In this document: positions 421 to 59,402 of the stretch, in pieces
Numbering within the stretch: the first letter of the stretch is position 1
Layout of the letters: each line of letters starts with the position of its first letter
NCBI RefSeq assembly: GCF_006345805.1
Contig: NC_043009.1
Location: 6,510,001 to 6,574,000, forward strand
Source of the DNA: Octopus sinensis
Taxonomy: Eukaryota
Reading direction: 5' to 3'
DNA: 64,000 nucleotides
Position numbers and translations under genes: made by a program
The notes under the pieces: generated by a model
Databases searched by the model: none
Seen by the model: the letters and a program-made list of their open reading frames with translations, nothing else
What the model was told of the DNA's origin: nothing

Positions 421-597
421 TATAAAGTTGAATTGTATTTCAATTAGAGTTCAATTAGAGGTTATAAAAACCGTCTAAGGGATGTTTATATCCAATGAAA
501 GTAAGAACGGATGTAAGAGAAGAGAGTAACATTTCGACTGATTCAAATGAGGTTAGTACAGACAGACAGAGAGACGAACAGACTCACAGACAGACGA

Positions 598-631
598 ACA
601 GATAGATATACAGACAGACAGTAGATTGATC

Positions 632-686
<55 letters not shown>

Positions 687-692
687 GGATGG

Positions 693-726
<34 letters not shown>

Positions 727-782
727 ATAGATAGATATATATATAGAGAGAGATAGAGATAGATAGATAGATAGATAGATAT

Positions 783-828
<46 letters not shown>

Positions 829-829
829 G

Positions 830-867
<38 letters not shown>

Positions 868-872
868 GAGAG

Positions 873-915
<43 letters not shown>

Positions 916-936
916 GATGGATAGATAGATAGATAT
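598..936. repeat. (AGAT)n/(GATA)n microsatellite abutting the 3' end of Tx1 LINE copy 1
   Basis: Direct reading: long AGAT array with AG/GGAT variants. Confidence 0.95.
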
Positions 937-1341
937 GTTTCTTTATTAGCCACACAGGGCTGCACACAGATAGAACAAATTACAAGGTAGAGCTTTTCTT
1001 TTGAAGGTATAAAAAAAAAAAAAAAAAAAAAAAAAAGGAAGGGGGAGGTTCGATCAAAAGGGATCGTAAAAGGAGAGAAAAGGACAAAAATAAGGGGGTT
1101 TAAAAAAAAAAAAAAAAAAAAAAAAAAGGGGGGAGAGGAAAAAAAATGATCAATAGGGATCGTTATCACAGAAATGTCAATATGAAGTGTAAAGGGGAGG
1201 ACAGGTGAGGTTTACCCGTGGAAAGAAAAGCCTGCGGAAAAGACCACGGTAACCTCGGTCAATGAAGTCACATTTTATATTCTTTTTTTTTTTTTTTTTT
1301 TTTTTTGCAAATAAGCAACTCTCTGTTTTCGATTTCTGGGT

Positions 1342-4300
1342 TCATAGGACTATGCTCAAGGTGGCTTCGTCATTCATACGTGCCATTCTTGCTACATTCA
1401 CCCATCTTTTTTTAAAACATTCGCTAGACAAAACTTGCCTCTCTACTCTCACTTTCCTTTTCAAGTGGTACTTGAAGAAGTTGATGAGAGATTGACCAGA
1501 GAGGAAAGTGTTGTCTCCAATCCTTTCAGACGCGTCCACCAGATACATTCTTTCGCCATAGCCACAAGGATGATGAAAATAGCTCTTCCTTCCCGTTTGA
1601 AGGAAGGAGGCGTGACAATATTGACGATAGACTCAGCTGATAAACCGACTCGTCCCACACGTGACAGCAGTTGTTCGACATAAGCCCACAGGTCGGAAAT
1701 TGTTGGACACTGAACGAGTGCGTGCAGAACGGTTTCGTCGCTCTGACCGCATCTCGGGCAGGTCGGCCCCGTGTTTCTCGAGCCGTGTCTGTAGAGCTTA
1801 TCCCGAACGGGTAGCGCTTCTCGGTAGCACTGCCAGGCCAGGGATCTCTGGAAGTTGTCCATGGGCCCTGGCCCGAAAGTCGTCCCGAACAGGCGGGTCA
1901 GGTACTCCTCGTCGACGTCCAGGTTCGCCCCGAGCTCGTCGTCGTACCTCCCCTCCACTAAACCCCTATAGAATGCTTTGGTTGTGTTGAAGTCACTTAA
2001 GGTCGACCCAGGACGGCAGAGTTGCTTGAGAGCAACGCGACACTCGCGGTGCCATTCGCCTTCCTCGGCCTCTTTTTGATCCACGACTGCAGTTCGGTCA
2101 TGGAGACGAGCTGCGGGAAAGCGTGCCTCACAAACGGCGACCACACCTGTTCACCGTCGTCTACATAGAGCCAGAGATGTCGCAGTCTCAGCGCGTGTCT
2201 GCGCATCATCAACCACGGCATGCCCAGCCCTCCTTTTAACGGGTGTTGACAGCAAATGGATCGCCTGACCATCGGGACGCATCCTTTCCACAAGAAGCGA
2301 AAGAGGATGCGTTGTAGTTTGGTGATGGTAGGGTCGGGACAAGGTACGACGGTCAGGCGGTAGTAGATGACGGACGCGATGTACGTGTTCGCCACCTCCG
2401 CTCGACCTTTTAGGCACAGTTTCCTGTCGGCCCATTGCCGGGCGAGAGAGACCACCCTACTCGTTATCTCGTTCCAGTTCTTCTCCACTTGGAGGTCCGG
2501 ACCAAACCAGACCCCGAGCAACTCAACCGGGCCGTCGGTCCAGCGTCCCACGACGGAGGCGCTGGTGGACGGCATGGGCTTGCTTCTCCAGGTGCCTAGT
2601 CGCAAGCCCACTGACTTTTCCCGGTTGATTTTCGCTCCTGTCACCGCTTCGTAGTTTTTCAGTGTCTCGCCGACCAGCTCGATGTGCTCGTGGCTAGACA
2701 CTATGACGGTGACGTCGTCCGCGTATGCAGACACGCTCGTCCCGCATCCCAATTCTCGCGGGATGCCCCTTAGAGTCGCCAGCTTCCGCAGTAGTGGCTC
2801 AAGAGTCAATACGTATAGAAGCGCCGAGAGGGGGCATTCCTGACGGACCGAACGTGCAATGTCGAAAGGTCTCGATAGATGTCCATTTACGCGAATTACC
2901 GAACGGATGCCTCTGTACAAGGCAGCTATCCAGCCGCGGAAGACGGGACCGAAACCAGCCGCTCTCAGGACTGCCTCCAAGTATCGATGGTCTACCCTAT
3001 CAAAGGCTTTTGATTGATCCAAGTTGATCAGGGCCCCACCCATGCCAGGTTCGTTAACTACCCTGTCTATGATGTAGCACATCAGATGGAGGTTGTCATG
3101 GATGGTCCGGCCTGGCACGGCGCATGTTTGCGCCTTGTCGACCAGTTTCTCGATGACAAGCGCCAACCTCTTGGCTAGCACCTTGGCCAAAATTTTCAAG
3201 TCTGCATTAAGCAGAGTGATGGGCCTAAAGTTATCTATTACATTTCCCTTGTTTAGATCTTTCTTCAGCAGTGTTACGGCTCCTCGGCTCACAAAACCAG
3301 GAATGCTCCCGTTTTGCTGCCAGTTGCAGTACACCGCCGCCAAGAGATCTCCAAACAAGTCTGGCATACAATTGTAAAGCTCGTAGGTAGACCATCCAAA
3401 CCCGGTGATTTGTCCCTCGAGCATTCTGCCATCGCTTCCCGCACTTCCGCCGCCGCCGTGATGGCACCTTCGCAGCACCCTGCCTTTCTTGTCGAGAGTC
3501 GTGGTAGGCTATGTAGGTAGGCACTGAAGTCCACCCTACGTTCTTGCCCTCCACTCGTCGTTCCGAACAGTCGGGCAAAATGCTGCTGAAGGCCTCACAC
3601 ATTTTACTTGGCTCGAGCAATTCGCGCCCCTGTTCATCTACCAGTGACCGAATGGTGGCTTTGTTGCCCTGTTTGCGCTCTGCCACCCGGGCCTCTCTCG
3701 CGGCTCCAACACCTTCGTTCCTTAGAGCACGCATCCTAGCTCTGACAGCACATCCTTCGTGTTTGGCGTTGAAGTGTTGGTCGAGGGCCAACCTCGCCGC
3801 CAAAACGTCGGATGCGATGCCGCTTCTAATTGCCTCTTCTTCTAGCTTCTTAACTAGCTCACCCTCTACTCTATTTCTATCTATGGCTAGTGCTTTGCTG
3901 TACCTAATAGCTTCTTCTGCTTTTACTGCTCTCTTGAGGGCAAACCACCATTTGTTGTTGATGATGGCTCCCGTCAAAGCCCTCTTTACTAGTGTGCTAA
4001 TCCGGTCTCTGAAAACTTGTCTCGATGGGAAAGACGCGTTTAGTTTCCAGTATCCGGACCCTGCCTAAGTGTTTACCTAAGTCTAGCGTACATGTCACAA
4101 GTTTGTGATCCGTGTAGCTGACTATGTGGAATTGTGGACATCCTATGCTATCTCTATCTACTGTCCTACACAGTATCCTATCTAGATACGATCTCGACGA
4201 CCCGATGCGGTTGCTCCATGTCCACGTTGGCGCATTCGGGTGGTCTAGTCGAAACCTGTCAGACAGTTGAAAGCGTCTGAGCAGGTCTCTGAGGCATTTG

Positions 4301-4782
4301 CATCCCCGTCTATTCCTATCTCTACCCACGTAGTCTACATGCGTGTCCAAGGTAGCATTCCAATCCCCCACTAAGAGTAAGGACGAGACGTTCCCAAGAA
4401 AACTTCTAGACGTTGAAAGAAATCCGCCCGACCTGTTAAGGGCGGTGCGTAAACTGATACGAGCCGAAAAGCGCACCCATTGCTGCCGTCGACATCCAGG
4501 ACGACCAGTCTACCCTCCGGGTCTACGAATATTGTCCTTACATTGAGATCCAGACTCTTGTGAAAAAGTACCGCGGTGCCACTACCGCCCATTCTCGCAG
4601 ACAGGGGGAAAAATAAATGTTGAACTGTCCGCCAAACATGGTCTTTAGGGCCCGCGGATTGTGAAGTCTGGTCTCGCTTATGGCTATGATTTCTAACTTA
4701 TGTGACTTTATGTCATTTAAGAGGTACCCTTGTTTCCAAGGGACCCCAAGCCACGCGCATTTACACAACCAATCTTGATCAT
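1342..4782 (-). pseudogene. Tx1 ORF2 (APE endonuclease + reverse transcriptase + C-terminal zinc finger), broken by several frameshifts
   Basis: ATG at 4782 reads MIKIGCVNARGL, then IIAISETR, LLVGDWNATL, SYLDRIL, SYTDHKLV (APE motifs). RT motifs: [43 protein letters not shown](E/G)[12 protein letters not shown]. Then CPRCGQSDETVLHALVQC. Pieces lie in ORF-track frames 4538-4768, 4371-4592, 3997-4476, 3231-3977, 3289-3534, 1997-3478, 1461-2144, 1342-1548. Confidence 0.92.
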
Positions 4783-4809
4783 AGTTCTAATGAATTAGAA
4801 TACAGAGGG

Positions 4810-6815
4810 TTACTTACTGCTCGAAAGTTTTTGCTTTCTCCTCCGTTGGTTTGTCCTCGAGAAGATCCCAGTACAGTTTCTTTGTGAGATATTTTTGGCA
4901 TTTACCAACCGCACTGGGAAAAATGCCTTTGAGTGTGTGGGGTGCAGACTTTTGGAGATGTGTATTATTTTGATGTGGTCTGGTGGTGTTGTGTATGGGT
5001 GGTTGTTTGTTTTTATGTCATCTTCTGTTATGTTTGTTTTTGATTGGATGTATTCCATCAAATTTGTGTTTTTGGTGTCTATGGCTGTGAGCATGTTTGC
5101 TGTATATGTTTTTGTGGTGTTGGTGTGGCTGTTGTTTGCGTTGGGTTTTGAAATGTCTTCGGGAGATGTATTTCCCCCTGCTTTGTTCGTGTTTGCATTT
5201 GGTTTGGTTGTGTTTCTGCTCTTTATTTTCCTTCTTTTTGTAGCTATTTGCCATTCCTCACTGGTTTCGTCTTCCGACGAAATTTCTGAGGAATCAGAAG
5301 GGGGTAGGGGTATGTTGTGGGCTTCTATGTATGTCTGTGTAAGTGGTTGTGTTGTTGTTTTCGTTGTTGTTGGTTGTTGAGTGTTTGTGTGTGTTGAGTG
5401 CGGTATAAGGGATGGGGGATCAGTTTGTGTGTGTTTTCTTTGATTTTCTGTTCCTTTGGGTTTTGCTGTTGATGGTAGTGTTGGTATTTTTCCAGGTGTC
5501 GAGTGGTTTTTGGTTGATGACGGATTAGCTTGGTGTGCTTCTCTTGTCGTCTTCTGTGTTGATGGTGGTGTGGGTAGTAGAGCTTTTTTTCCGGAGTGCT
5601 TTGGTTGTGGTAGTGGTTGTTGTTGTTGCTCTTGGTGTGCAGTGGTTGGGCACGTCTTTTTCAAGTGTGTTTCGCTTCCACACAAATAGCAGCGTGGTCG
5701 CCTGCCCTCTACCACTATATAGAGTTTGTAGCCTCCTGGCAGTTCTATAGCGGTGGGTATCTTCTCTCTTGCTGCTTCATCCAATTGAAGCAGGAATTCG
5801 ATTGATTTGCCCACATAGTCTTTCTCTCCTAGAACCGCGATTTCCAGGATGTTTGTCTCTGACATTGTCTCTGACATTTCAAAGCAGATGGCAGAGACCA
5901 CCCATTGTGTGTCGACATCAAATGGTATGTTTTTTATTTGGACTTTCGTGACCCTTTTGTTTAAATAGACTGGTATCATTACCAAGTCGTCCGAATGTAG
6001 CTCCAATGTGGAAAACGTTTTGCTAAACTTTCGTTGAGGAAACGTACTTGGACTGTACCAATTTGTTTCCCCAACTGATATATTCCTTGGAGTCCCATAC
6101 AGGACGAAGGCATTTATCGATTTTTTCCTGCGGTGCATTTTCTGTTCTTCTTGTTTTTTTGTTTATTACTTTATAAATTATTGTTTTTTTTTTGCGTGTT
6201 TTCCACGATGTGTTGTGGAATATGAAGGTGCATTTGTCTCCTTCTTTGGAGAAGAGTGCCTTTGTGCGGTTTATCTCTTGTGTGGTGAATGTTACAATTG
6301 TTCTTTTTTGTTTTGTTACGTCCGCAAATTCGTTTGAATTTGGCAGTAGAAGTGTTAATTGTGGCAGTGTTAATTGAAGTCATGGTAGTGGTGTTGGTGT
6401 TGGCGGTATTAGCAGCAGAAGGCTTGGATGTAGCATTTGACGTCGTAGTAGTGGTGTTGGTGTCGGCGGTGTTGTCTTTGGTAGGCGGCTTTGTGCCAAT
6501 TTCGTTGTTGTTGTTGTTGGTGGTGATGGTGGTGGTGCTGGCATTCATGTTTTCGTTTGTATTCATTTTTGAAATCCCTTTCTCTGTCCCTTTATCATCA
6601 ACAAGTGGTGTGGGGAGTGAGGGGAAATCTAAGTTAATGTCTTTGGTCGCGGCGATGGTGAATGCGACGTTAGATTTGTTGTTGTTGTTGTTGGTGGTGG
6701 TGATGGTGGTGACAGCGGTGTTCACGCTGCGATGTTTAGCAGCTAGTGGTAGCAATAGTGTTTTGCTACCGTTCTGCATGACTGGCGGGCTAGCCACGTG
6801 GTTTCTAGTTGCCAT
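4810..6815 (-). pseudogene. Tx1 ORF1 (gag-like nucleic-acid-binding protein with CCHC zinc knuckle), frameshifted
   Basis: VEGRRPRCYLCGSETHLKKTCP knuckle in the 4810-6138 frame. Thr/Asn-rich N-terminus from ATG 6815 (MATRNHV..). An intermediate third frame (~6300-6040) reads KKTIIYKVINK..KIDKCL..EYISWGNK and aligns with the ORF1-only protein. Confidence 0.85.
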
Positions 6816-7035
6816 TTTCAAAATGAAAAATGGCTAAAAAACCCACGAAAGTTTTGAAAGTTTTTTTGTAATTTCGCCCATACAGGGGCGGAATTCTACG
6901 TGAATAATTCTCAGGTTTTTTAGTGAATGAATTTGCACAACGATTAAAACAAAATATTTGACAACAAGGAGTTTTAAACATGTAAAAGTGGCCAACTTAC
7001 TTGGAGCCGATATGACTAGCGTCCGTCCATTGTAG

Positions 7036-7063
7036 ACAGATAGATAGAGAGAGAGAGAGATAG

Positions 7064-7125
<62 letters not shown>

Positions 7126-7137
7126 ATAGATATATAT
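7036..7137. repeat. (AGAT)n spacer between the two tandem Tx1 copies
   Basis: Direct reading. Confidence 0.95.
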
Positions 7138-9314
7138 GTTTCTTTATTAGCCACACAGGGCTGCACACAGATAGAACAAATTACAAGGTAGAGCTTTTCT
7201 TTTGGAGGTTTAAAAAAAAAAAAGAAAGGAAGGGGGAGTTTCGATCAAAAGGGATCGTAAAAGGAGAGAAAGAGGACAAAAAAAAGGGGGGTTAAAAAAA
7301 GGGGGAGAGGAAAAAAAAATTGATCAATAGGGATCGTTATCACAGAAATGTCAATATGAAGTGTAAAGGGGAGGACAGGTGAGGTTTACCCGTGGAAAGA
7401 AAAGCCTACGGAAAAGACCACAGTAACCTCGGTCAATGGAGTCACATGTTATATTTCTTTTTTTTTTTTTTTGGCAAATAAGCAACTCTCTGTTTTCAAT
7501 TTCTGCGTTCATAGGATCATGCTCAAGGTGGCTTCGTCATTCATACGTGCCATTCTTGCTACATTCACCAATCTTTTTTTAAAACGTTCGCTAGACAAAA
7601 CTTGCCTCTCTACTCTCACTTTCCTTTTCAAGTGTTACTTGAAGAAGTTGATAAGAGATTGACCAGAGAGGAAAGTGTTTGTCTCCAATCCTTTCAGACG
7701 CGTCCACCAGATACATTCTTTCGCCATACCCACAAGGATGATGAAAATAGCTCTTCCTTCCCGTTTGAAGGAGGGAGGCGTGACAATATTAACGATAGAC
7801 TCAGCTGATAAACCGACTCGTCCCACACGTGACAGCAGTTGTTCGACACAAGCCCACAGGTCGGAAATTGTTGGACACTGAACGAGTGCGTGCAGAACGG
7901 TTTCGTCGCTCTGACCGCATCTCGGGCAGGTCGGCCCCGTGTTTCTCGAGCCGTGTCTGTAGAGCTTATCCCGAACGGGTAGCGCTTCTCAGTAGCACTG
8001 CCAGGCCAGGGATCTCTGGAAGTTGTCCATGGGCCCTGGCCCGAAAGTCGTCCTGAACAGGCGGGTCAGGTACTCCTCGTCGACGTCCAGGTTCGCCCCG
8101 AGCTCGTCGTCGTACCTCCCCTCCACTAAACCCCTATAGAATGCTTTGGTTGTGTTGAAGTCACTTAAGGTCGACCCAGGACGGCAGAGTTGCTTGAGAG
8201 CAACGCGACACTCGCGGTGCCATTCGCCCTTCCTCGGCCTCTTTTTGATCCACGACTGCAGTTCGGTCATGGAGACGAGCTGCGGGAAAGCGTGCCTCAC
8301 AAACGGCGACCACACCTGTTCACCGTCGTCTACATAGAGCCAGAGATGTCGCAGTCTCAGCGCGTGTCTGCGCATCATCAACCACGGCATGCCCAGCCCT
8401 CCTTTTAACGGGTGTTGACAGCAAATGGATCGCCTGACCATCGGGACGCATCCTTTCCACAAGAAGCGAAAGAGGATGCGTTGTAGTTTGGTGATGGTAG
8501 GGTCGGGACAAGGTACGACGGTCAGGCGGTAGTAGATGACGGACGCGATGTACGTGTTCGCCACCTCCGCCCGACCTTTTAGGGACAGTTTCCTCTCGGC
8601 CCATTGCCGGGCGAGAGTGACCACCCTACTCGTTATCTCGTTCCAGTTCTTCTCCACTTGGAGGTCCGGACCAAACCAGACCCCGAGCAACTCAACCGAG
8701 CCGTCGGTCCAGCGTCCCACGACGGAGGCGCTGGTGGACGGCATGGGCTTGCTTCTCCAGGTGCCTAGTCGCAAGCCCACTGACTTTTCCCGGTTGATTT
8801 TCGCTCCTGTCACCGCTTCATAGTTTTTCAGTGTCTCGCCGACCTGCTCGATGTGCTCGTGGCTAGACACTATGACGGTGACGTCGTCCGCGTATGCAGA
8901 CACGCTCGTCCCGCATCCCAGTTCTCGCGGGATGCCTCTCAAGGTTGCCAGCTTCCGCAATAATGGCTCGAGAGTCAATACGTATAGAAGCGACGAGGGG
9001 GGGCATCCCTGACGGACCGAACGTGCGATGTCGAAGGGTCTCGATAGATGTCCATTCACGCGAATTACCGAACGGATGCCTCTGTACAAAGCGGCTATCC
9101 AGCCGCGGAAGACGGGACCGAAGCCAGCCGCTCCGAGGACCGCCTCCAAGTATCGATGGTCCACCCTATCGAAAGCTTTCGATTGATCCAAATTGATCAG
9201 CGCCCCACCCATGCCAGGTTCGTTAACTACCCTGTCTATGATGTAGCGCATCAGGTGGAGGTTGTCATGGATGGTCCGGCCTGGCACGGCGCATGTTTGC
9301 GCCCTGTCGACCAG
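7138..9314 (-). mobile_element. 5'-truncated Tx1 LINE copy 2, head-to-tail with copy 1
   Basis: Highly similar to 937-3135. Truncated in the RT domain at 9314, where it abuts (AGAT)n. Same 3' end AATAAAGAAAC. Confidence 0.93.
7509..9314 (-). pseudogene. RT C-terminal half and zinc finger of Tx1 ORF2 (copy 2); premature TGA at ~7989
   Basis: Contains [17 protein letters not shown] and YADD. CGA(R) in copy 1 is TGA here, a CpG-type change. Confidence 0.9.
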
Positions 9315-9340
9315 AGATAGATAGATAGATGGATAGATAG

Positions 9341-9372
<32 letters not shown>

Positions 9373-9386
9373 ATAGATAGATAGAG

Positions 9387-9442
<56 letters not shown>

Positions 9443-9459
9443 GGATAGATAGATAGATG

Positions 9460-9491
<32 letters not shown>

Positions 9492-9507
9492 TATAGATAG
9501 ATGGATG

Positions 9508-9580
<73 letters not shown>
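9315..9580. repeat. (AGAT)n then (AG)n microsatellite at the 5' truncation junction of copy 2
   Basis: Direct reading. Confidence 0.95.
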
Positions 9581-9583
<3 letters not shown>

Positions 9584-9699
9584 CGTAGATAAATAGGAAG
9601 TAAACATTTTTAAATATCCACACATTTGCCAAAACCTTTTCTTCAATGCTCTCGTGCTAGAACGTGGTTAAGTGCCTTTGTGGTTGAGTAACAGGTTTT

Positions 9700-10540
9700 C
9701 GTTTTTGTGTCACAGAGATCAGTGATCCGATTTCCCTCATCTGAAAGTGTGTCACGGGCCGAAATTCTTCGCAGACTTTCAGTGTAATGCGAGCGATCTA
9801 CAACGTAGAAGTGCGTGAGAAGTTTTAAAATGGTCGTAGAAGCGTGAAACATGAAGAGGGAGCAGGACACCCACCAGCTTCCTCCAGAGATATTCATATT
9901 GAAGAAAATCTGGTAAACCAGTCGCATACTCTCTGCAAGTTATCCAAAAAATTACCCAAGATAAAAAGGGATTCCGTAAAGGATGTGCGAAATGAGTGCG
10001 AAAAAGATGTTACCGAAGCGTATAAGCGCTATTTAGTAGACATCCGTTAACGCCTTCTCTGCAACGATGAAGGTGGGTTTTTGCTCTGTTTTCTTTGTTT
10101 TTGTTTTGATTTTTTGGAGAGAAAACTCATTGGAATTGATGATTCAACAGTCTGCAGTAAAAAGTGATGCGAACCGTTTTGGGGGATGCAAAACGGCCTT
10201 TACTAAAACATTACATGGAAAATGAGTCTACATTCAGTAGTATAGGCTACAGTGAAATACAGGTAAGCTATTCACAACAAAGATTAAAGTCTAACATTGG
10301 ATTCTAAGTTGCTAGAACACTCCTTACAATCCTTAGAGTCGAGATCACGACCGACTATCTCTTCGTTTCGTCTGCTCAAACATCTTTTACCAGATCTCCC
10401 ATTGCTGCGGAAGACTCAGATCACGAGGTCATATATGAACGGCCGCACGATCAGGCGAAACCTTATTCTTTGATGGAATAAGCGAGCTTTTGCACCGTTG
10501 GATCAAGCAAGGAGACTATGCCGAAAAAAGGATCTAATTG
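9700..10540 (+). mobile_element. Highly decayed mariner-like transposase remnant
   Basis: Frameshifted peptides SVIRF..AEILRRL, KNGRRSVKHEEGAGHP (HTH / ERSGRP-like) and terminal QGDYAEK resemble a mariner transposase. No TIR found. Confidence 0.45.
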
Positions 10541-15783: not shown

Positions 15784-16264
15784 GTGTGTCTGCTGGTATG
15801 TGTGAACGTAGCTGCTATTTATTTCATTTTTTTTTTCTTTTAGCTAGATAAATAATTGTATGTTCATCGAAAATTCACTCCAGATATGTGATGAACAATC
15901 CCATGTTTTCTTTATAACCAAGATTTACCCATCATGTTTATTTAGATCACATAGACATATACAGATATACCCGACAACCTTTTGACTTGTTGTGCACTCT
16001 CAGATATTGCATATCTCGTTTTAGGTGAACCTAACTTGGTTCTGTTTAGGTTAATGTATGATTAATCATTATATTGCGCCTTGCACGTATTCATACATCT
16101 CAAATAATATTCCATCCTCAGAGCAAGCGAAAAGTATATTTATTATGACTTTATTCAGACAGTTTTTGGGGTTCCTTGTTTATATAATGTCACCTCCTCG
16201 TTACTTAAATTATGTGGCTACATGATTAAACTCAGCTCAATATTATTTGCGTAAAATGCGTTGA

Positions 16265-17878: not shown

Positions 17879-18283
17879 GGCGCAGGAGTGGCTGTGTGGT
17901 AAGTAGATTGTTTACCAACCACATGGTTCTGGGTTCAGTCCCACTGTGTGGCACCATGGGCAAGTGTTTTCTTCTATAGCCTCGGGCCGACCGAAGCCTT
18001 GTGAGTGGATTTGGTAGACGGAAACTGAAAGAAGCCCGTCGTATATATGTATGCGTGTGTGTGTTTGTGTGTCTGTGTTTGTCCCCCTAGCATTGCTTGA
18101 CAACCGATGCTTGTGTGTTTATGTCCCCGTTACTAAGCGGTTCGGCAAAAAAGACCGATAGAATAAGTACTGGCCTTACAAAAGAATTAGTTCCGGGGTC
18201 GAGTTGCTCGATTAAAGGCGGTGCTCCAGCATGGCCGCAGTCAAATGACTGAAACAAGTAAAAGAGTAAAAGAGTAAGAGTAA
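17879..18283 (+). mobile_element. Full-length SINE family A (uninterrupted reference, 'empty site' for the ORF1-only element)
   Basis: Head GGCGCAGGAGTGGCTGTGTGGTAAGTAGATTGTTTACCAACC with A box and B box (GGTTCAGTCCC). Tail GGCGGTGCTCCAGCATGGCCGCAGTCAAATGACTGAAACAAGTAAAAGAG. Confidence 0.9.
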
Positions 18284-23342: not shown

Positions 23343-23375
<33 letters not shown>

Positions 23376-23379
23376 CATG

Positions 23380-23416
23380 GGCGCAGGAGTGGCTGTATGG
23401 TAAGTAGCTTGCTAAC
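23380..23416 (+). mobile_element. 5' head of a SINE A split by the ORF1-only element (rest at 25521-25910)
   Basis: GGCGCAGGAGTGGCTGTATGGTAAGTAGCTTGCTAAC; the last 13 nt are repeated at 25521-25533. Confidence 0.9.
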
Positions 23417-25520
23417 GGTTGCTTCTGCGCATGTGCGAGTCAGTGTTGTGTTCGGCACTGAAGCGGTGAAGACGTGCCATTGAAGCCGTCTTCAATTGAA
23501 AACTTTGGAAGCCCCATGTAAGGTAAGATTCTGTTTTCTGGGTCCAGTGGGAGTTTTTGTTGAGAATTGTTTTTTACAGGCAGGAAGTCCTACTGGATTC
23601 AGAATTCTGATTCTGCCGACATGTGGCAAATATATTTTTCTCGCTGAGAAAATTTTTGGGGGCGTATCCGTCTTCGATAAATTGAGTGAATATTTTTCTC
23701 ACGTAATTGTGAGAATTGTATTGTGCTGTGAAGAACTTTTATGAATTGTGAAAACTACTATATAGGGGAGTATTTTGCCTCCGAAGTTTGAACAATTTTT
23801 ACCAATTTTACACCAATTTTTGTGGAAGTTGTGCGTTCCTGGTTCAATTTAGGCCGGGAGTACCAAATGGCCAGAAGGTTTTTGCTGTGTTATTGCTTTC
23901 TTTTTAACTTTATTTGACTTTCTTTTTTTACTTTATTTGACTCTCTCCTTTTTTCACTGTGACTTTCTTCGGATTTCCTTTTCTTCTCGTTTTTTAGTTT
24001 TATTCTGAATACATTAAAAAAAAAAAAAAAAAAAAGAACATGGCAACGAAAGAAAAAACTTTTGGAATGGGAGATCATACCGCCTAAAAAGTGGTTAAAA
24101 GACCGTGAAGATAGGACGGTGGTGTTGAGAACCTACTCCAAGGCACTTGACACCATCGCCCTATTCGAAAAGACGGCAATTGAAAAGGAGTTGGAAGAGT
24201 ATTTGCCAACAATTAAATTCATTTCCAGGGGTGTCAAATATGCAACGGTGTGGTTGCTATTTGACACCCCTGAAGAGGCTTGCAAATTTGCTAGCAAACC
24301 CTTGGAGGGTAAGGAAATCTTATTCCTGCCCACGTACAAAAAAAAGAAATTGATGAAAGCTTGGATCTGCGGACTGACACCCGACATAGAACCCGAATGG
24401 ATAGAGGAGACTATCCGCCGGGGTCTGGGTGACAGCGAAACTAAGCTCCTCAATGTAAAAGTTCTTCCTGCGGCTGCTTGGGTTGGGTCAAAAGCAATTT
24501 TGACCCTGTGGTCCCAATCAGCCAATCTGGTTCTTCCAGATTTTTTGAAAATGGCCGGGTGCAGGTACCCGGTGATGCTTGAGGGTCGCCCCCCTAAGTG
24601 TCATCGGTGCTTGGAGTCCGGCCACATAAAGAAGAACTGTCCCCGGGAACAAAATAGGATCCCGGAACAGTTAAGTAAAACCCCTCTAGAAGAGGGAATG
24701 ATAACGGCCGGGAAAGCAGAGGACTCCTCAAACAGAGGCCGAAAGAGGAAGGTGAGCAACAATGGGTGCTCACCAAAAGATAATAGGGATGAGGAGAGGA
24801 AGGCGAATCTTCCAGCCACGGAGGAGACGCACCCTCCCTCAGTTGAAAAGGGAAAAAAAAGAAAAAGAGGAAGAAAAACGGGACATTACCGGCTGTCAGT
24901 GTAGCACCGGAATTACGTCGGTTGGGGTTGTGCCACCGACAAGAGAAGGAATACCGTTGGCGGGAACTGTGCCGCCAACGAAAGAACTGAACGTATTGGT
25001 CCTCTTCTATAGAGGAGGAGAAATTGAAAAAGTGATGGAAGAGCACTACAAGGGAGCTCCTTTAGCCTTCACACAGGGCCCCGAATGTCCTCCGCAGGTA
25101 GCTGTGGAGGCCGTGGCGTTCGACGTGACGCTTGGGCTAAAGGAGCTCAATGAAGATTATAACTTGGTCCCGGGCGACGCCAACTCGGAACTTGATTACG
25201 TTCTGAGGGAGGCGTGGTTGATGGTGGAGGGCGCGGGCACAAGCTATTTCGAGGACGATATGTAATTATTGAACTGTTATTATTCGTAATGGACTGCTAA
25301 GTCCAAAAATTGAAAAATTGTAAGAGGTTTAATACCTCGTTTTGTGTTTATCTTTAAAAAGAACAATGTTTTAGAGAAGCGAAAGTCGGCGGGCGCTTTT
25401 TGTCTTCTCCCATCCTTATCATCTTTCTTTCATTATCATTCACTTCATTAATGTCCTCGTCCAGCCCGCAAAGCTAACTTAATCTGTGTACTGCCTTTAT
25501 GGCAAATGTTTTGAAATAAA
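23417..25520 (+). mobile_element. ORF1-only (pol-less) Tx1-type non-autonomous retroelement, copy 1, 2104 bp
   Basis: Bounded by a 13-bp direct repeat GTAGCTTGCTAAC. About 620 nt 5' UTR, gag-like ORF, 3' UTR ending in AATAAA with no poly(A). Second copy at 57200-59364. Confidence 0.88.
24040..25265 (+). pseudogene. Tx1-like ORF1 protein (~400 aa consensus) with CCHC knuckle; frameshifts near the start and at ~24850-24910
   Basis: MLEGRPPKCHRCLESGHIKKNCP. Aligns with the LINE ORF1 (e.g. LTPDIEPEWIEETI vs IPFDVDTQWVVSAI; MLEGRPPKC vs VVEGRRPRC). ORF-track pieces 24062-24904 and 24762-25265. Confidence 0.85.
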
Positions 25521-25908
25521 GTAGCTTGCTAACCAACCACATGGTTCCGGGTTCAGTCCCACTGCGTGGCATCTTGGGCAAGTGTCTTCTGCTATAGCTC
25601 CGGGCCGACCAATGCCTTGTGAGTGGATTTGGTAGACGGAAACTGAAAGAAGCCTGTTGTATATATGTATATATATATGTATGTGTGTGTGTGTTTGTGT
25701 GTCTGTGTTTGTCCCCCTAGCATTGCCTGACAACCGATGCTGGTGTGTTTACGTCCCCGTCAATTTGCGGTTCGCCAAAAGAGACCGATAGAATAAGTAC
25801 TGGGCTTACAAAGAATAAGTCCCGGGGTCAATTTGCTCGACTAAAGGCGGTGCTCCAGCATGACCGCAGTCAAATGACTGAAACATGTAAAAGGGTAAAG
25901 AGTAAAGA

Positions 25909-25910
<2 letters not shown>
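25521..25910 (+). mobile_element. Remainder of the split SINE A
   Basis: GTAGCTTGCTAACCAACCACATGGTTCCGGGTTCAGTCCC... through GGCGGTGCTCCAGCATGACCGCAG..GTAAAGAG. Confidence 0.9.
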
Positions 25911-25980
<70 letters not shown>

Positions 25981-56884: not shown

Positions 56885-57199
56885 CTCTTTTACTCATTGC
56901 AAATCGACCCCAGGACTTATTTTTGGAAGCCTAGTATTTATTTTATCAGGTCCCTTTTGCCGAACCGCTAAGTTACGGGGACGTAAACACACCACCATCA
57001 GTTGTCAAGCGATGTTGGGGGCACAAACACAGACACACAAACATATGCACACACACATACATATATAAATATATGTATACATATATACGATGGGCTTCTT
57101 TCAGTTTCCGTCTACCAAATCCACTCAAAAGGATTTGGTCGGCCCTAGGCTATAGTAGTAGACACTTACCCGGAACCATGTGGTTGGTAAGCAAGCTAC
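56885..57199 (-). mobile_element. 3' remainder of a SINE A split by ORF1-only copy 2
   Basis: Minus strand starts GTAGCTTGCTTACCAACCACATGGTTCCGGG; head at 59365-59402. Confidence 0.88.
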
Positions 57200-59364
57200 T
57201 TTATTTCAAAACATTTGCCATAAAGGCAGTACACAGATTAAGTTAGCTTTGCGGGCTGGACGAGGGCATTAATGAGGTGAATGATAATGAAAGAAAGATG
57301 ATAAGGATGGGAGAAGACAGAAAGCGCCCGCCGACTTTTGCTTCTCTAAAACATTGTTCTTTTTAAAAAGATAAACACAAAACGAGGTATTAATCCTCTT
57401 ACAATTTTTCAATTTTGGGACTTAAGTCCATTACTAATAATACATATCGTCCTTGAAATAGCTTGTGCCCGCGCCCTCCACCATCAATCACGCCTCCCTC
57501 AGAACGTAGTCAAGTTCCGAGTTCGCGTCGCCCGGGACCAAGTTATAATCTTCATTGAGCTCCTTTAGCCCGAGCGTCACGTCGAACGCCACGGCCTCCA
57601 CAGCTACCTGCGGAGGCCATTCGGGGTCCTGTGTGAAGGCTAAAGGTGCTCCCTTGTAGTGCTCTTCCATCACTTTTTCAATTTCTCCTCCTCTATAGAA
57701 GAGGACCAATACATTCAGTTCTTTCGTTGGCGGCACAGTTTCCGCCAACGGTATTCCTTCTCTTGTCGATGGCACAACCCCAACCGACGTAGTTCCGCGA
57801 CATTCCGGTGCTACACTGACAGCCGGTAATGTCCCGTTTTTCTTCCTCTTTTTCTTTTTTTTTCCCTTTTCCCTTTTCCTCCGTGGCTGGAAGATTCGCC
57901 TTCCTCTCCTCATCCCTATTATCCTTTGGTGAGCACCCATTGTTGCTCACCTTCCTCTTTCGGCCTCTGTTTGAGGAGTCCTCTGCTTTCTCGGCCGTTA
58001 TCGTTCCCTCTTCTAGAGGGGTTTTACTTAACTGTTCCGGGATCCTATTTTGTTCCCGAGGACAGTTCTTCTTTATCTTTATGTGGCCGGATTCCAAGCA
58101 CCGATGACACTTAGGGGGGCGACCCTCAAGCATCACCGGGTACCTGCACCCGGCCATTTTCAAAAAATCTGGAAGAACCAGATTGGCTGATTGGGACCAC
58201 AGGGTCAAAATTGCTTTTGACCCAACCCAAGCAGCCGCAGGAAGAACTTTTACATTGAGGAGCTTAGTTTCGCTGTCACCCAGACCCCGGCGGATAGTCT
58301 CCTCTATCCATTCGGGTTCTATGTCGGGTGTCAGTCCGCAGATCCAAGCTTTCATCAATTTCTTTTTTTGTACGTGGGCAGGAATAAGATTTCCTTACCC
58401 TCCAAGGGTTTGCTAGCAAATTTGCAAGCCTCTTCAGGGGTGTCAAATAGCAACCACACCGTTGCATATTTGACACCCCTGGAAATGAATTTAATTGTTG
58501 GCAAATACTCTTCCAACTCCTTTTCAATTGCCGTCTTTTCGAATAGGGCGATGGTGTCAAGTGCCTTGGAGTAGGTTCTCAACACCACCGTCCTATCTTC
58601 ACGGTCTTTTAACCACTTTTTAGGTGGCATGATTTCCCATTCCAAAATTTTGTTATTTTTCATTGCCATGTTTTTTTAATATATATTCAAATTAAACTCA
58701 AAAGCAGGAAGAAAAAGTTCAAAAGTCCAAATAAAATTTGATAGATTTTTGAAAAAACAAAAAGGAGAAAGCACAACAGAAGGGAAGAAATTAACGGAAA
58801 GTCGCAATAAAGAAAAAAAACAAAAGGGGGGTTTAAATGAAGTTCAAAAGAAAGTTAATAAACAGAAAAAACACAGCAAAAATATTCTGGTCTTGCGGTA
58901 CTCCCGGCCTGGGTTGAACCTGGAACGCCGCAACTGCAACACAACCTCAACAAAATTGGGTCCGAAAGGTAATCCAATAGTGGCTTATTTTTATAATTTT
59001 CTTGCGAAGTACTCTGACAAGGGAATAAATTCAACAAACCCAAACACAGCACTGGCTACCGCCAACGGTAATTTTAACAGTAACTGTATTGAATTCTGAG
59101 GATACGCCCCTCCACTGTTTTTTCTTTTTTTTTCAATGAACACAGAAACGGCAGCCGCCGAGAGCAGGCGAAATTGTCTCAGAGTTGGACACAACCTACT
59201 GAAATAATAATTGGCACGCAATAAATTATGCCCAACTCACAATAAACAAAATCACTTACCTCGACAACTTTCCGTTTTTGGTCTTTTTTCTTTAATTGGA
59301 CAGAGCTGATTGACTCGCGTCCACTCTGGCTGAACAGGAAGCAGCTGACTAATTGCGCATGTGC
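57200..59364 (-). mobile_element. ORF1-only Tx1-type element, copy 2, 2165 bp
   Basis: ORF and 3' UTR near-identical to copy 1; ends in AATAAA at 57200; flanked by GTAGCTT(T)GCTAAC / GTAGCTTGCTTAC. Confidence 0.88.
57434..58669 (-). pseudogene. ORF1 of copy 2 (MAMKNNKILEWEI..CHRCLESGHI..), frameshifts at ~58360 and ~57800-57850, TGG>TGA at 57488
   Basis: ORF-track pieces 58355-58669, 57693-58358 and 57488-57940; the lesions differ from those of copy 1. Confidence 0.85.
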
Positions 59365-59402
59365 GTTAGCAAAGCTACTTACCACACAGCCACTCCTGCG
59401 CC
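59365..59402 (-). mobile_element. 5' head of the split SINE A
   Basis: Minus strand GGCGCAGGAGTGGCTGTGTGGTAAGTAGCTTTGCTAAC. Confidence 0.9.

What the first reader, a model, noticed from the sequence alone, without database searches (positions are those of the whole stretch)
23380..25533. ORF1-only retroelement inserted twice at the identical nucleotide of a tRNA-derived SINE head
Seen: copy 1 (23417-25520, +) and copy 2 (57200-59364, -) both interrupt SINE A right after the A-box region (GGTAA|GTAGCTTGCTAAC). The 13-mer is duplicated (23404-23416/25521-25533; 59365-59378/57187-57199), while uninterrupted SINE A copies (17879, 40732, 47428) have it once. Outer flanks, host SINE variants and ORF lesions differ, arguing for independent insertions. 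The element encodes only a gag-like CCHC protein homologous to the Tx1 LINE ORF1, with no RT or endonuclease. Established: HAL1 elements are ORF1-only L1 derivatives, and Tx1 families target multicopy RNA genes or other transposons. Inference: a protein-coding, non-autonomous, site-specific parasite of a SINE (a hyperparasite), which splits the SINE's A and B boxes. In copy 2 the left repeat (..GCTAAC) differs from the right (..GCTTAC), so the left copy may partly come from the element RNA.
Basis: partly seen in the sequence, partly recalled or inferred. Interest (0 to 1): 0.9.

Follow-up and report, generated by a model that had tools for sequence, protein, structure and literature searches.

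The report
RT-less retroelement homing to an octopus SINE
A 2.1-kb octopus retroelement that encodes only an RNA-binding ORF1 protein, with no reverse transcriptase, has inserted independently at the same nucleotide of a common SINE, so it looks like a site-specific parasite of another parasite that must borrow its copying enzyme.

Summary
Two about 2.1-kb copies (23417-25520 +; 59364-57200 -) each interrupt a SINE at the same nucleotide. They are flanked by a 13-15-nt duplication that uninterrupted SINEs carry once.

The insertions are independent. The element's ORF and 3'UTR are 97.5% identical between copies. Their host SINE parts are only 89% identical (p=1e-8), no closer than to an uninterrupted SINE, and the outer flanks differ.

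Two diverged relatives in Octopus sinensis (63% amino-acid, 76.5% nucleotide identity) also start right after a SINE head at the same position.

The protein is a LINE ORF1p with tandem RRM folds and a CCHC knuckle. It is 28% identical to the ORF1 of an endonuclease/RT LINE in this window. No endonuclease or RT remnant exists in any copy. ORF1 dN/dS between subfamilies is 0.15-0.21, which points to a long-lived, protein-dependent, non-autonomous lineage.

Not shown: the autonomous partner, the Tx1 clade assignment (inferred only), and genome-wide copy counts.

Newly seen: a conserved 20-bp hairpin inside ORF1, an AATAAA spanning the 3' junction, and a relic of an earlier target at the 5' end of copy 1.

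Closest analogues are HAL1, HeT-A and other ORF1-only telomeric elements, and Tx1-Mar/SINEU. I rate it a new variant of a known kind, of moderate interest.

The parts
23380..23416 (+). Head of the host SINE of copy 1 (tRNA-like, with A-box-like TGGCTGTATGG). It ends with the left target-site duplication.
   Evidence: colinear with uninterrupted SINEs at 17879, 40732 and 47428.
23402..23416 (+). Left target-site duplication of copy 1, AAGTAGCTTGCTAAC
   Evidence: D6: exact 15-nt direct repeat, spacing 2117.
23417..25520 (+). ORF1-only retroelement, copy 1 (5'UTR, ORF1, ORF2', 3'UTR)
23417..23437 (+). 5' terminus of copy 1. GGTTGCTTC resembles the end of the SINE head seen in the O. sinensis copy L002 (GTTTGCTTCC) and is read as a relic of an earlier target. 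It is followed by the palindrome-like TGCGCATGTGCG, which is present at the start of all four copies.
   Evidence: The promoter role is inferred only.
23523..23579 (+). Intron-like segment in the 5'UTR (AAG|GTAAGA...TTTTTTACAG|G, 57 nt)
   Evidence: a donor at offset 99-107 and a length of 56-61 nt in copy 1, copy 2 and L002. No RNA evidence.
24040..24904 (+). ORF1, with two RRM-like domains and a CCHC knuckle. The ATG is at 24040, a frameshift lies near 24056, and the frame is open from 24062.
   Evidence: dN/dS 0.15-0.21.
24226..24272 (+). Conserved 20-bp hairpin inside ORF1
   Evidence: -34.7 kcal/mol, z=-7.3. It is kept in L001 and L002 with one compensatory and two wobble changes. It is absent from the ORF1s of autonomous relatives.
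24599..24640 (+). CCHC zinc knuckle, CHRCLESGHIKKNC
   Evidence: zf-CCHC, below the Pfam cut-off. The cysteines and histidine are conserved in the family alignment.
24762..25265 (+). ORF2', a second open frame of 167 codons. The part shared between copies is 24912-25262. Its significance is unknown.
   Evidence: no homologue; dN/dS 0.81.
25266..25520 (+). 3'UTR with no poly(A) or microsatellite tail. AATAAA at 25515-25520 spans the junction.
   Evidence: 97.1% identical to copy 2; no significant terminal structure.
25519..25533 (+). Right target-site duplication of copy 1
   Evidence: D6.
25534..25910 (+). Remainder of the host SINE of copy 1: B-box-like GGTTCAGTCCC, an internal TA/TG microsatellite, and the 3' end GTAAAGAGTAAAGAGT
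59365..59402 (-). Head of the host SINE of copy 2, including the left repeat GTAGCTTTGCTAAC (59378-59365)
57200..59364 (-). ORF1-only retroelement, copy 2. It has a different 5'UTR. ORF1 is split by a frameshift at about 58360. The hairpin is at 58481-58435.
56885..57199 (-). Right repeat GTAGCTTGCTTAC (57199-57187) and the tail of the host SINE of copy 2. The tail has a 27-nt internal deletion and a shortened 3' part.
4810..6138 (-). ORF1 of an autonomous-type LINE (about 7030 to 940, minus strand). It is homologous to the element's ORF1 but has a different 3' end and a different target.

Best explanation
The feature is a family of non-autonomous non-LTR retroelements of an octopus. The elements are about 2.1 kb long. 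They keep a 5'UTR, a LINE-type ORF1 (two RRM-like domains plus a CCHC knuckle), a short downstream open frame and a 3'UTR. They have no endonuclease or reverse transcriptase.

Shown:
- Each copy sits at one nucleotide position of an abundant tRNA-like SINE, after ...GTAGCTTGCTWMC in the anticodon-arm-like hairpin between the A and B boxes.
- The two copies whose 3' side can be read have a 13-15-nt target-site duplication.
- The two window copies arrived independently in different SINE copies.
- The same 5' junction occurs in two diverged subfamilies in O. sinensis.
- ORF1 evolved under purifying selection between subfamilies.

Inferred:
- The RNA is made from a promoter at the element's 5' end and starts a few bases upstream, inside the SINE.
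- It is cleaved downstream of the terminal AATAAA, so it carries SINE sequence at its 3' end.
- ORF1p coats this RNA, and the conserved hairpin inside ORF1 may be a recognition signal.
- An as yet unseen L1/Tx1-group LINE with an endonuclease specific for this SINE site supplies ORF2p in trans. It nicks the bottom strand at the left edge of the duplicated 13-15-mer. The SINE-derived RNA tail anneals there and target-primed reverse transcription follows.
- The insertion separates the SINE's A and B boxes and so inactivates that SINE copy.
For: - Junctions and duplication.
- An empty-site SINE is restored when the insert and one repeat copy are removed, and 7 or more uninterrupted SINEs carry the motif once.
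- Independence: the SINE parts are 250/280 identical against 1414/1450 for the element (p=1e-8). Excluding CpG sites, divergence is 9.5% vs 2.1% (p=1e-7). The host SINE of copy 1 is as close to an uninterrupted SINE (90.3%) as to the host of copy 2 (89.3%).
- The same 5' junction occurs in O. sinensis loci L001 and L002, on different chromosomes and with different flanks.
- ORF1p nature: blastp E=4e-15 to the ORF1 of a LINE whose ORF2 has Exo_endo_phos, RVT_1 and zf-RVT. The AlphaFold model has pLDDT about 90 over residues 1-190 and matches tandem-RRM proteins. The CCHC knuckle is seen.
- No endonuclease or RT remnant: with a positive control.
- Purifying selection on ORF1: dN/dS 0.21 overall and 0.15 in the folded part.
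- The 15-nt duplication, with no LTRs or terminal inverted repeats, fits target-primed reverse transcription.
- Literature: Tx1-clade LINEs are often target-specific, including for other transposons, and non-autonomous SINEU shares its partner's target (PMC4494074). ORF1-only derivatives exist as HAL1 (PMC5753468) and as ORF1-only telomeric elements that rely on the ORF2p of relatives (PMC13534243).
Against: - No autonomous partner with the same 3' end or target was found. The LINE in the window ends differently (...GGCTAATAAAGAAACATAT(CTAT)n) and sits in a (CTAT)n array.
- Only four copies could be examined. Two of them were retrieved through their ORF, so the sample is biased.
- In L001 and L002 the 3' side is truncated or shows no significant SINE tail. 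There, only the 5' junction supports the shared site.
- The promoter, the intron, the poly(A) site and the role of the hairpin have no RNA evidence.
- All copies seen carry lesions, so present-day activity is not shown.
- The second open frame shows no constraint (dN/dS 0.81) and has no homologue.
Confidence: 0.75

Rival explanations
1. The ORF1-only copies are not a self-propagating lineage. They are dead-on-arrival internal-deletion products made again and again from an unseen full-length LINE specific for this SINE site. The selection seen on ORF1 would then act on that master element.
For: All four copies carry frameshifts, stop codons or a damaged knuckle. No census was possible. Relatives of this ORF1 do sit in full-length LINEs.
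Against: The same architecture (ORF1, the same downstream frame, a short 3' end, about 2.0-2.2 kb) recurs in subfamilies as far apart as 76% nucleotide identity and in two genomes. No endonuclease or RT remnant is left at any deletion point. A hairpin specific to this family is conserved. An exhaustive protein search found no ORF1 closer than about 30% apart from these copies.
Confidence: 0.12
2. Site specificity does not come from a site-specific endonuclease. It comes from the element's own RNA. SINE sequence carried at the 3' end (read-through past the terminal AATAAA) and at the 5' end (upstream start) anneals to SINE DNA and steers integration by a LINE enzyme of ordinary specificity.
For: AATAAA spans the 3' junction in both copies. 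Copy 1 carries a relic of an earlier SINE target at its 5' end. Both left repeats share the variant GCTAAC, which is absent from all uninterrupted SINEs, while the right repeat of copy 2 has the SINE consensus. Co-transcribed target sequence is reported to strengthen specific integration in R-type elements (cited in PMC4494074).
Against: Nucleotide-exact junctions with a regular 13-15-nt duplication are what sequence-specific APE-type endonucleases of the Tx1 clade give (PMC4494074). Annealing alone does not create the nick. Only two 3' junctions are available.
Confidence: 0.12
3. A single composite (SINE head, element, SINE tail) arose once. It was then copied, either by segmental duplication or by retrotransposition of the whole composite.
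For: The short SINE heads of the two window copies are nearly identical (36/37) and share one derived base.
Against: The SINE tails are about 88% identical against 97.5% for the element (p=1e-8, and p=1e-7 without CpG sites). Homology stops at the SINE ends. The host SINE of copy 2 has its own 27-nt deletion. The O. sinensis copies sit behind a different SINE-head variant, GCTTCC. There are many T-runs, 13-19 in the 5'UTR alone, so Pol III read-through from the head is not possible.
Confidence: 0.02
4. The 'SINE' is a deletion derivative of the element, formed by recombination between the two 13-15-nt repeats. On this view the element is the full-length form, not an insertion.
For: Direct repeats flank the internal part. 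ARAGORN and Rfam do not recognise the SINE head as a tRNA.
Against: The SINE is far more diverse and older than the element: subfamilies are about 75% identical and host copies 89% identical, against 97.5% for the element. Head and tail together form an acceptor stem, an anticodon-like hairpin and a T-like arm with A and B boxes only when joined.
Confidence: 0.02

Closest known systems
HAL1 ('half-L1') of mammals
   Same: It is a non-autonomous LINE derivative that keeps ORF1 and has lost ORF2. Such elements arose repeatedly, propagate on the partner's ORF2p, and keep ORF1 functional (PMC5753468, citing Bao and Jurka 2010).
   Different: HAL1 derives from L1 proper, with a Type II ORF1p (Transposase_22), and inserts without site specificity. 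This element has a Type I ORF1p (RRMs plus CCHC) and one fixed target nucleotide.
HeT-A and other ORF1-only telomere-specialised Jockey-clade elements of Drosophila
   Same: These are Gag/ORF1-only non-LTR elements with a single genomic niche that depend on the ORF2p of related elements. About 40% of telomeric families are ORF1-only, and ORF1-only lineages give rise to new ones (PMC13534243, PMC2173066).
   Different: They belong to a different clade (Jockey). Their target is a chromosome end rather than an internal DNA sequence, they make no target-site duplication, and they are beneficial to the host.
Tx1L in Tx1D (Xenopus); Tx1-Mar LINEs and SINEU-3 in Mariner-N4_AMi (crocodilians)
   Same: These are L1/Tx1-group elements that insert at a specific position of another transposon. 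Non-autonomous passengers share the partner's target (PMC4494074).
   Different: Their targets are DNA transposons (or LTR elements), not a SINE. The passengers (SINEU) are non-coding, whereas this one encodes ORF1p. Membership of the Tx1 clade could not be tested here because the element has no RT.
Keno, Mutsu and Dewa (Tx1 clade), and Dada DNA transposons
   Same: They insert at fixed sites in multicopy Pol III/snRNA-type sequences: U2, 5S, the tRNA-Leu spacer and tRNA genes (PMC3706591, PMC4494074).
   Different: Those target genuine RNA genes and are autonomous. Here the target is a tRNA-like SINE head, and no tRNA gene could be examined (one search found none in the window).

Membership tests
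Non-LTR (target-primed) retroelement | Target-site duplication of variable or longer length (about 7-20 bp), with no LTRs and no terminal inverted repeats | tested here: met
   A 15-nt exact duplication in copy 1 and 13/14 nt in copy 2. Apart from microsatellite matches, the only terminal repeat pair is the duplication itself.
Non-LTR (target-primed) retroelement | A 3' end with poly(A) or a simple-repeat tail, and frequent 5' truncation | tested here: not met
   The element ends ...TTTGAAATAA directly at the duplication, with no tail. All four copies start at the same 5' junction. This is common in site-specific LINEs, so it is not disqualifying.
LINE ORF1p, Type I (RRM plus CCHC) | At least one RRM fold followed by a CX2CX4HX4C knuckle | tested here: met
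   The model has pLDDT about 90 over residues 1-190. Foldseek's best hits are tandem-RRM proteins (probability 1.0, E about 4e-4). The knuckle is CHRCLESGHIKKNC..
LINE ORF1p, Type I (RRM plus CCHC) | Sequence homology to the ORF1 of a LINE that also carries an endonuclease/RT ORF2 | tested here: met
   28% identity and E=4e-15 to window ORF 4810-6138(-). Its ORF2, and those in L004 and L006, have Exo_endo_phos, RVT_1 and zf-RVT. In L003 the ORF1 is followed by an endonuclease N-terminus..
Tx1 clade | Placement of the RT domain within the Tx1 clade | not testable with these tools
   The element has no RT. The RT hits for the window LINE are unnamed and no reference Tx1 sequences were on hand. 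Indirect support: the O. vulgaris annotation lists L1-Tx1 as the L1-group class (PMC13282606), and Type I ORF1p variants are consistent with Tx1 (PMC5203782).
Tx1 clade | Insertion at a specific sequence (RNA gene, microsatellite or another transposon) | tested here: met
   4 of 4 5' junctions lie at the same SINE position, and 2 of 2 readable 3' junctions do too. The sample is small.
HAL1-like ORF1-only non-autonomous LINE derivative | ORF1 present and ORF2 (endonuclease/RT) absent | tested here: met
   No RT or endonuclease in Pfam. tblastn with two LINE ORF2 queries gave no hit at E<0.05, and the control was positive.
HAL1-like ORF1-only non-autonomous LINE derivative | ORF1 kept under purifying selection while the lineage diversified | tested here: met
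   dN/dS 0.21 (267 codons) and 0.15 (194 codons) for copy 1 vs L001, and 0.22 for L001 vs L002.
HAL1-like ORF1-only non-autonomous LINE derivative | Derived from L1 proper (Transposase_22 ORF1p) | tested here: not met
   No Transposase_22 match; the protein is RRM/CCHC type. The element works like HAL1 but is not a HAL1.
HAL1-like ORF1-only non-autonomous LINE derivative | An autonomous partner with a shared 3' end supplies ORF2p | tested here: inconclusive
   The window LINE has a different 3' end and target. No partner was found in about 180 kb of octopus DNA or in the protein databases.
tRNA-derived SINE (the host) | Head recognisable as a tRNA, with A and B boxes | tested here: inconclusive
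   A-box-like and B-box-like motifs are present, and the fold shows an acceptor stem, an anticodon-like hairpin and a T-like arm. ARAGORN found no tRNA and Rfam gave no tRNA hit.

The most novel reading that the evidence does not exclude
Octopus genomes may hold an old, self-sustaining lineage of RT-less retroelements. These would use their own ORF1p, a conserved 20-bp hairpin inside the ORF, and target sequence carried on their RNA to capture the enzyme of a site-specific LINE and home to one nucleotide of a SINE. There is also a second, unrelated ORF1-only unit in a (TA)n array in O. vulgaris, and Drosophila has its ORF1-only telomeric elements. Taken together, these would point to a general rule: LINEs that specialise on one target repeatedly spawn ORF1-only parasites.
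Probability: 0.35. Interest if true: 0.7.

Novelty: new variant of a known kind. Interest (0 to 1): 0.55.

Why it matters
Each ingredient is known separately: ORF1-only derivatives, Tx1-type site specificity, and passengers that share a partner's target. I found no described case that combines a protein-coding, RT-less element with nucleotide-exact homing into a SINE.

If a census confirms it, the case gives a second system, independent of the Drosophila telomere, for asking why target-specialised LINEs lose ORF2. It would also give a tractable pair (element RNA with hairpin, and partner ORF2p) for studying trans-mobilisation and target recognition. Finally, it would provide a set of datable, site-defined insertions useful as markers in octopus genomes, where SINEs and LINEs make up about a quarter of the DNA (PMC13282606).

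Tried and rejected
- Segmental duplication or a single composite ancestor: rejected by the divergence contrast.
- The SINE as a deletion product of the element: rejected for the same reason and by the cloverleaf continuity.
- Search for homologues of the second frame (24912-25262): none in 5.8 billion proteins, in the PDB or in LINE ORF2s by tblastn. Its dN/dS is 0.81, so it is not shown to be a constrained gene.
- PDB sequence search with ORF1p: nothing. The fold search did work.
- tRNA identity of the SINE head: ARAGORN and Rfam were negative.
- SINE tail 3' of the O. sinensis copy L002: not significant against shuffles. L001 is truncated inside the second frame.
- The window LINE as partner: rejected, because its 3' end and its target, (CTAT)n, are different.
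- Naming the LINE clade from database names: the hits are unnamed.
- More copies from public collections: viral and metagenome scans with the ORF1 profile, and a conserved 32-mer, found nothing. O. bimaculoides protein P0004 has no contig on record.
- A 3'-terminal RNA structure: none above shuffles.
Full report
**Source and material**

The window is cephalopod DNA. The only close protein relatives of the element come from Octopus sinensis, and the more distant named ones all come from O. bimaculoides, O. sinensis and O. vulgaris. Besides the window, I could read six O. sinensis, O. vulgaris and Logan loci, about 180 kb of octopus DNA in all.

**1.

Copy 1 lies at 23417-25520 (+). It is preceded by 37 nt of SINE head (23380-23416) and followed by the rest of the SINE (25534 to about 25910). 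The 15-mer AAGTAGCTTGCTAAC is present at both junctions, exactly, 2117 nt apart.

Copy 2 lies at 59364-57200 (-) in the same arrangement. Its left repeat is GTAGCTTTGCTAAC and its right repeat is GTAGCTTGCTTAC.

Removing the insert and one repeat restores a sequence colinear with uninterrupted SINEs at 17879, 40732 and 47428, and with further uninterrupted copies in L002, L004 and L005. All of these have the motif once.

The full SINE is about 400-470 bp. It has a tRNA-like head, an internal TA/TG microsatellite, and a 3' end GTAAAAGAGTAAAAGAG.

**2. The insertions are independent**

- The ORF and 3'UTR of the two copies are 97.5% identical (1414/1450 aligned bases).
- The host SINE parts are 89.3% identical (250/280; Fisher p=1e-8).
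- With CpG sites removed, divergence is 9.5% for the SINE parts against 2.1% for the element (p=1e-7).
- The host of copy 1 is as close to the uninterrupted SINE at 17879 (90.3%) as to the host of copy 2.
- The only derived base the two hosts share lies in the left repeat.
- Homology between the two loci ends at the SINE ends.
- The host of copy 2 has its own 27-nt deletion and a shortened 3' part.

This excludes a segmental duplication or a single composite ancestor. It also excludes the idea that the SINE is a deletion product of the element.

The first about 620 nt of the two copies are unalignable (54%). Yet the 5'UTR of copy 1 is 72% identical over its whole length to that of the O. sinensis copy L002. 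Copy 2 is therefore a mosaic: a 5'UTR from a distant subfamily joined to a near-identical body. This resembles the 5'UTR replacement known in L1 (PMC5753468).

**3. The same site is used in other subfamilies and another genome**

The O. sinensis protein P0001 is 63% identical to ORF1. It lies at L001 6001-6846. Its element begins right after a complete SINE head (...GGCTGTGTGGTAAGTAGCTTGCTTCC|TGTGCATGCG).

A second O. sinensis copy (L002 15704-17662) is 76.5% identical to copy 1 from the SINE head onward. It begins after ...GTGGTAAGAAGTTTGCTTCC|ACTGCGCATGTGCGAG.

Both lie on different chromosomes, with unrelated outer flanks. The SINE-head variant they follow ends in GCTTCC, as in the second SINE subfamily seen in the window.

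Their 3' sides cannot be used. L001 is truncated inside the second frame, and the L002 flank shows no significant SINE tail.

In total, 4 of 4 5' junctions and 2 of 2 readable 3' junctions are at the same position. A rough estimate shows how unlikely this is by chance. If a SINE of about 450 bp makes up at most about a tenth of the genome, a random insertion has about a 2e-4 chance of hitting one given SINE position. Three further coincidences are then negligible. This is inference, and two of the four copies were retrieved through their ORF, not at random.

**4. What it encodes**

ORF1 runs from 24040 to 24904. Copy 1 has a frameshift near codon 6, and copy 2 has one at an A-run near 58360.

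ORF1 aligns with the ORF1 of the LINE on the minus strand of the window (4810-6138) at 28% identity over 123 residues, E=4e-15. That LINE's ORF2 carries Exo_endo_phos, RVT_1 and zf-RVT. So do the ORF2s that follow ORF1 homologues in L004 and L006. In the Logan contig L003 the homologue is followed by an endonuclease-like N-terminus.

An exhaustive profile search of 1.84 billion representatives found only 66 relatives at E<0.001, so the family is narrow.

An AlphaFold model built on 15 family members has pLDDT about 90 over residues 1-190. Its best PDB matches are tandem-RRM proteins (hnRNP A1 UP1, SFPQ/NONO, Hrp1; probability about 1.0, E about 4e-4). The model shows two beta-alpha-beta domains followed by the knuckle CHRCLESGHIKKNC. 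This is the Type I ORF1p architecture, which is reported to be consistent with the Tx1 clade in non-mammalian animals (PMC5203782).

No endonuclease or RT remnant exists in any of the four copies. tblastn with two LINE ORF2 queries gave nothing better than E=0.06, while the control on the window LINE gave E=0.

Between subfamilies, ORF1 has dN/dS 0.21, and 0.15 over the folded 194 codons, with dS about 1. The protein therefore mattered while the family diversified.

**5. The downstream frame**

After ORF1 a second frame is open for 167 codons in copy 1 (24762-25265). It is recognisable at the protein level in copy 2, in L002 and at the start of L001.

It has no homologue anywhere. It shows no constraint (dN/dS 0.81, against 0.38 for ORF1 in the same pair).

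Its frame relative to ORF1 differs between copies. I read this by eye from the sequences. It may be a former C-terminal extension of ORF1p that is joined or broken at the A-rich run near 24850, or it may be non-functional. I leave this open.

**6. Features that bear on the mechanism**

- The element has no poly(A) or repeat tail. AATAAA (25515-25520) spans the 3' junction in both copies. Cleavage and polyadenylation would then fall some 10-30 nt further on, inside the SINE, giving the RNA a 3' tag complementary to the nicked target. This is inferred.
- Directly after its left repeat, copy 1 has GGTTGCTTC followed by TGCGCATGTGCGAG. L002 has GTTTGCTTCC, the end of its SINE head, in front of the same TGCGCATGTGCGAG. 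I read this as a relic of an earlier target that was carried on the RNA. That implies transcription starts a few bases upstream of the element.
- This reading also explains why both left repeats share GCTAAC, which none of the uninterrupted SINEs have. The right repeat of copy 2 keeps the SINE consensus GCTTAC.
- All four copies begin with a GCGCATGYGC-like palindrome. Three of them have a GTAAG...YAG segment of 56-61 nt at the same offset. I have no RNA evidence for a promoter or an intron.
- A 20-bp hairpin lies inside ORF1 at 24226-24272 (-34.7 kcal/mol, z=-7.3). It is kept in L001 (z=-6.4) and in the decayed L002 (z=-4.9), with one compensatory and two wobble changes.
- This 47-nt stretch differs at 2 positions between copy 1 and L001, whereas the ORF overall is 74% identical. 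ORF1s of the autonomous relatives have nothing comparable. It is a candidate cis signal.
- The last 100 nt of the element show no structure above shuffles.
- The target lies in the 3' half of the hairpin GGTAAGTAGCTTGCTTACC, between the A-box-like and B-box-like motifs. It is not a D-arm.

**7. Most likely mechanism**

Shown are the site-specific, independent, target-duplicating insertion of an ORF1-only element, and selection on its ORF1.

The rest is inferred. The element makes its own Pol II transcript. ORF1p binds that transcript. An L1/Tx1-group LINE whose endonuclease recognises this SINE site supplies ORF2p in trans. The bottom strand is nicked at the left edge of the duplicated 13-15-mer, the SINE-derived 3' tag anneals, and reverse transcription starts exactly at the element's end. 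The second nick falls 13-15 nt downstream.

The main alternatives are recurrent deletion from an unseen master, and RNA-guided rather than endonuclease-guided specificity. They are listed as rivals with the tests that would separate them.

**8. The partner**

The partner was not found. The window LINE (about 7030 to 940, minus strand) ends ...GGCTAATAAAGAAACATAT followed by (CTAT)n. It has (CTAT)n on both sides and a second copy in tandem upstream. Its 3' end and target are therefore different.

No other candidate appeared in the loci or the protein databases. Scans of the viral and metagenome collections found nothing. The assemblies themselves could not be searched with these tools.

**9. 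Comparison with known systems**

- The element works like HAL1, an ORF1-only derivative that arose several times (PMC5753468). It is not a HAL1, because its ORF1p is not of the L1 Transposase_22 type.
- It resembles HeT-A and the ORF1-only telomeric elements of Drosophila. These rely on the ORF2p of relatives, and ORF2 loss there is tied to target specialisation (PMC13534243, PMC2173066). They belong to another clade and have another kind of target.
- Its targeting resembles Tx1-clade elements that insert into other transposons, and their passengers: Tx1L/Tx1D and Tx1-Mar with SINEU-3 (PMC4494074). It also resembles Keno, Mutsu and Dewa, which insert in small-RNA loci (PMC3706591).
- The Tx1 assignment is indirect. 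The published O. vulgaris annotation lists L1-Tx1 as the L1-group class among active LINEs (PMC13282606).

My searches of the held literature found no report of a protein-coding, RT-less element homing into a SINE. Repbase could not be consulted.

**10. Verdict**

I classify it as a new variant of a known kind and rate its interest as moderate (0.55). It is neat and testable, and it may be general: a second ORF1-only unit sits in a (TA)n array in L005. But every component has precedent, and the decisive census and the partner are still missing.

Noticed in passing
window 24226-24272 (copy 2: 58481-58435; L001 6189-6235; L002 16626-16672): A 20-bp hairpin lies inside ORF1 (-34.7 kcal/mol, z=-7.3). 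It is almost invariant between subfamilies whose ORFs are only 74% identical, with one compensatory and two wobble changes. It is absent from the ORF1s of autonomous relatives.
   Followed up: partly
window 24762-25265 (+) and 57940-57443 (-): A second open frame of 167 codons lies downstream of and overlapping ORF1. It is shared by the copies. It has no homologue in any database and shows no evidence of constraint (dN/dS 0.81).
   Followed up: partly
window 23523-23579; copy 2 about 59259-59199 (-); L002 about 15840-15895: An intron-like segment (GTAAG...polypyrimidine...CAG, 56-61 nt) sits at the same offset in the 5'UTRs, including the otherwise unalignable 5'UTR of copy 2. A retained intron would be unusual for a retroelement. 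No RNA data are available.
   Followed up: partly
window 23417-23437: Copy 1 carries GGTTGCTTC right after its left repeat. It matches the end of the SINE head in front of the O. sinensis copy L002 and looks like a relic of an earlier target carried on the RNA. It is followed by a GCGCATGYGC-like palindrome found at the start of all four copies.
   Followed up: partly
window about 590-9632 (-): Two LINEs lie in tandem, each with endonuclease, RT and zf-RVT ORF2 pieces. Each ends ...GGCTAATAAAGAAACATAT followed by a (CTAT)n array. The downstream copy (about 7030 to 940) has (CTAT)n on both sides, which suggests a microsatellite-specific LINE.
   Followed up: partly
L005 about 7626-9719 (O. vulgaris OX597833.1): A different unit of about 2.1 kb holds only an ORF1 homologue (P0007, 379 aa, CCHC). 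It has no endonuclease or RT remnant and is flanked on both sides by (TA)n. Its 3' end resembles that of the window LINE. It may be a second ORF1-only family with another target.
   Followed up: partly
L006 2623-14283 (O. vulgaris OX597840.1): Full-length LINEs of the same group lie head to tail with a period of 5278 bp, each followed directly by the next copy.
   Followed up: no
L002 10001-36638 (O. sinensis CM016865.1): The annotated gene model 'K02A2.6-like' (P0002) uses the first about 46 codons of the element's ORF1 as an exon, fused to an integrase-like part. This is probably an annotation chimera of two transposable elements.
   Followed up: no
window 24017-24035; L006 7937-7971: An A-run lies immediately upstream of the ORF1 start codon: A17 in copy 1, shorter in copy 2 and L002, and A35 in the autonomous relative in L006. 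It is a shared feature of unknown role.
   Followed up: no
window 23352-23379 and 25911-25960: The host SINE of copy 1 is itself flanked on both sides by (TA)n, so this SINE copy sits inside a TA microsatellite.
   Followed up: no
L007-L012 (Logan runs SRR11869384-94): Near-identical contigs of about 1.7 kb from several runs of one project carry a 294-aa ORF1 homologue (P0006) and no visible ORF2. They look like transcripts. The organism was not identified.
   Followed up: no
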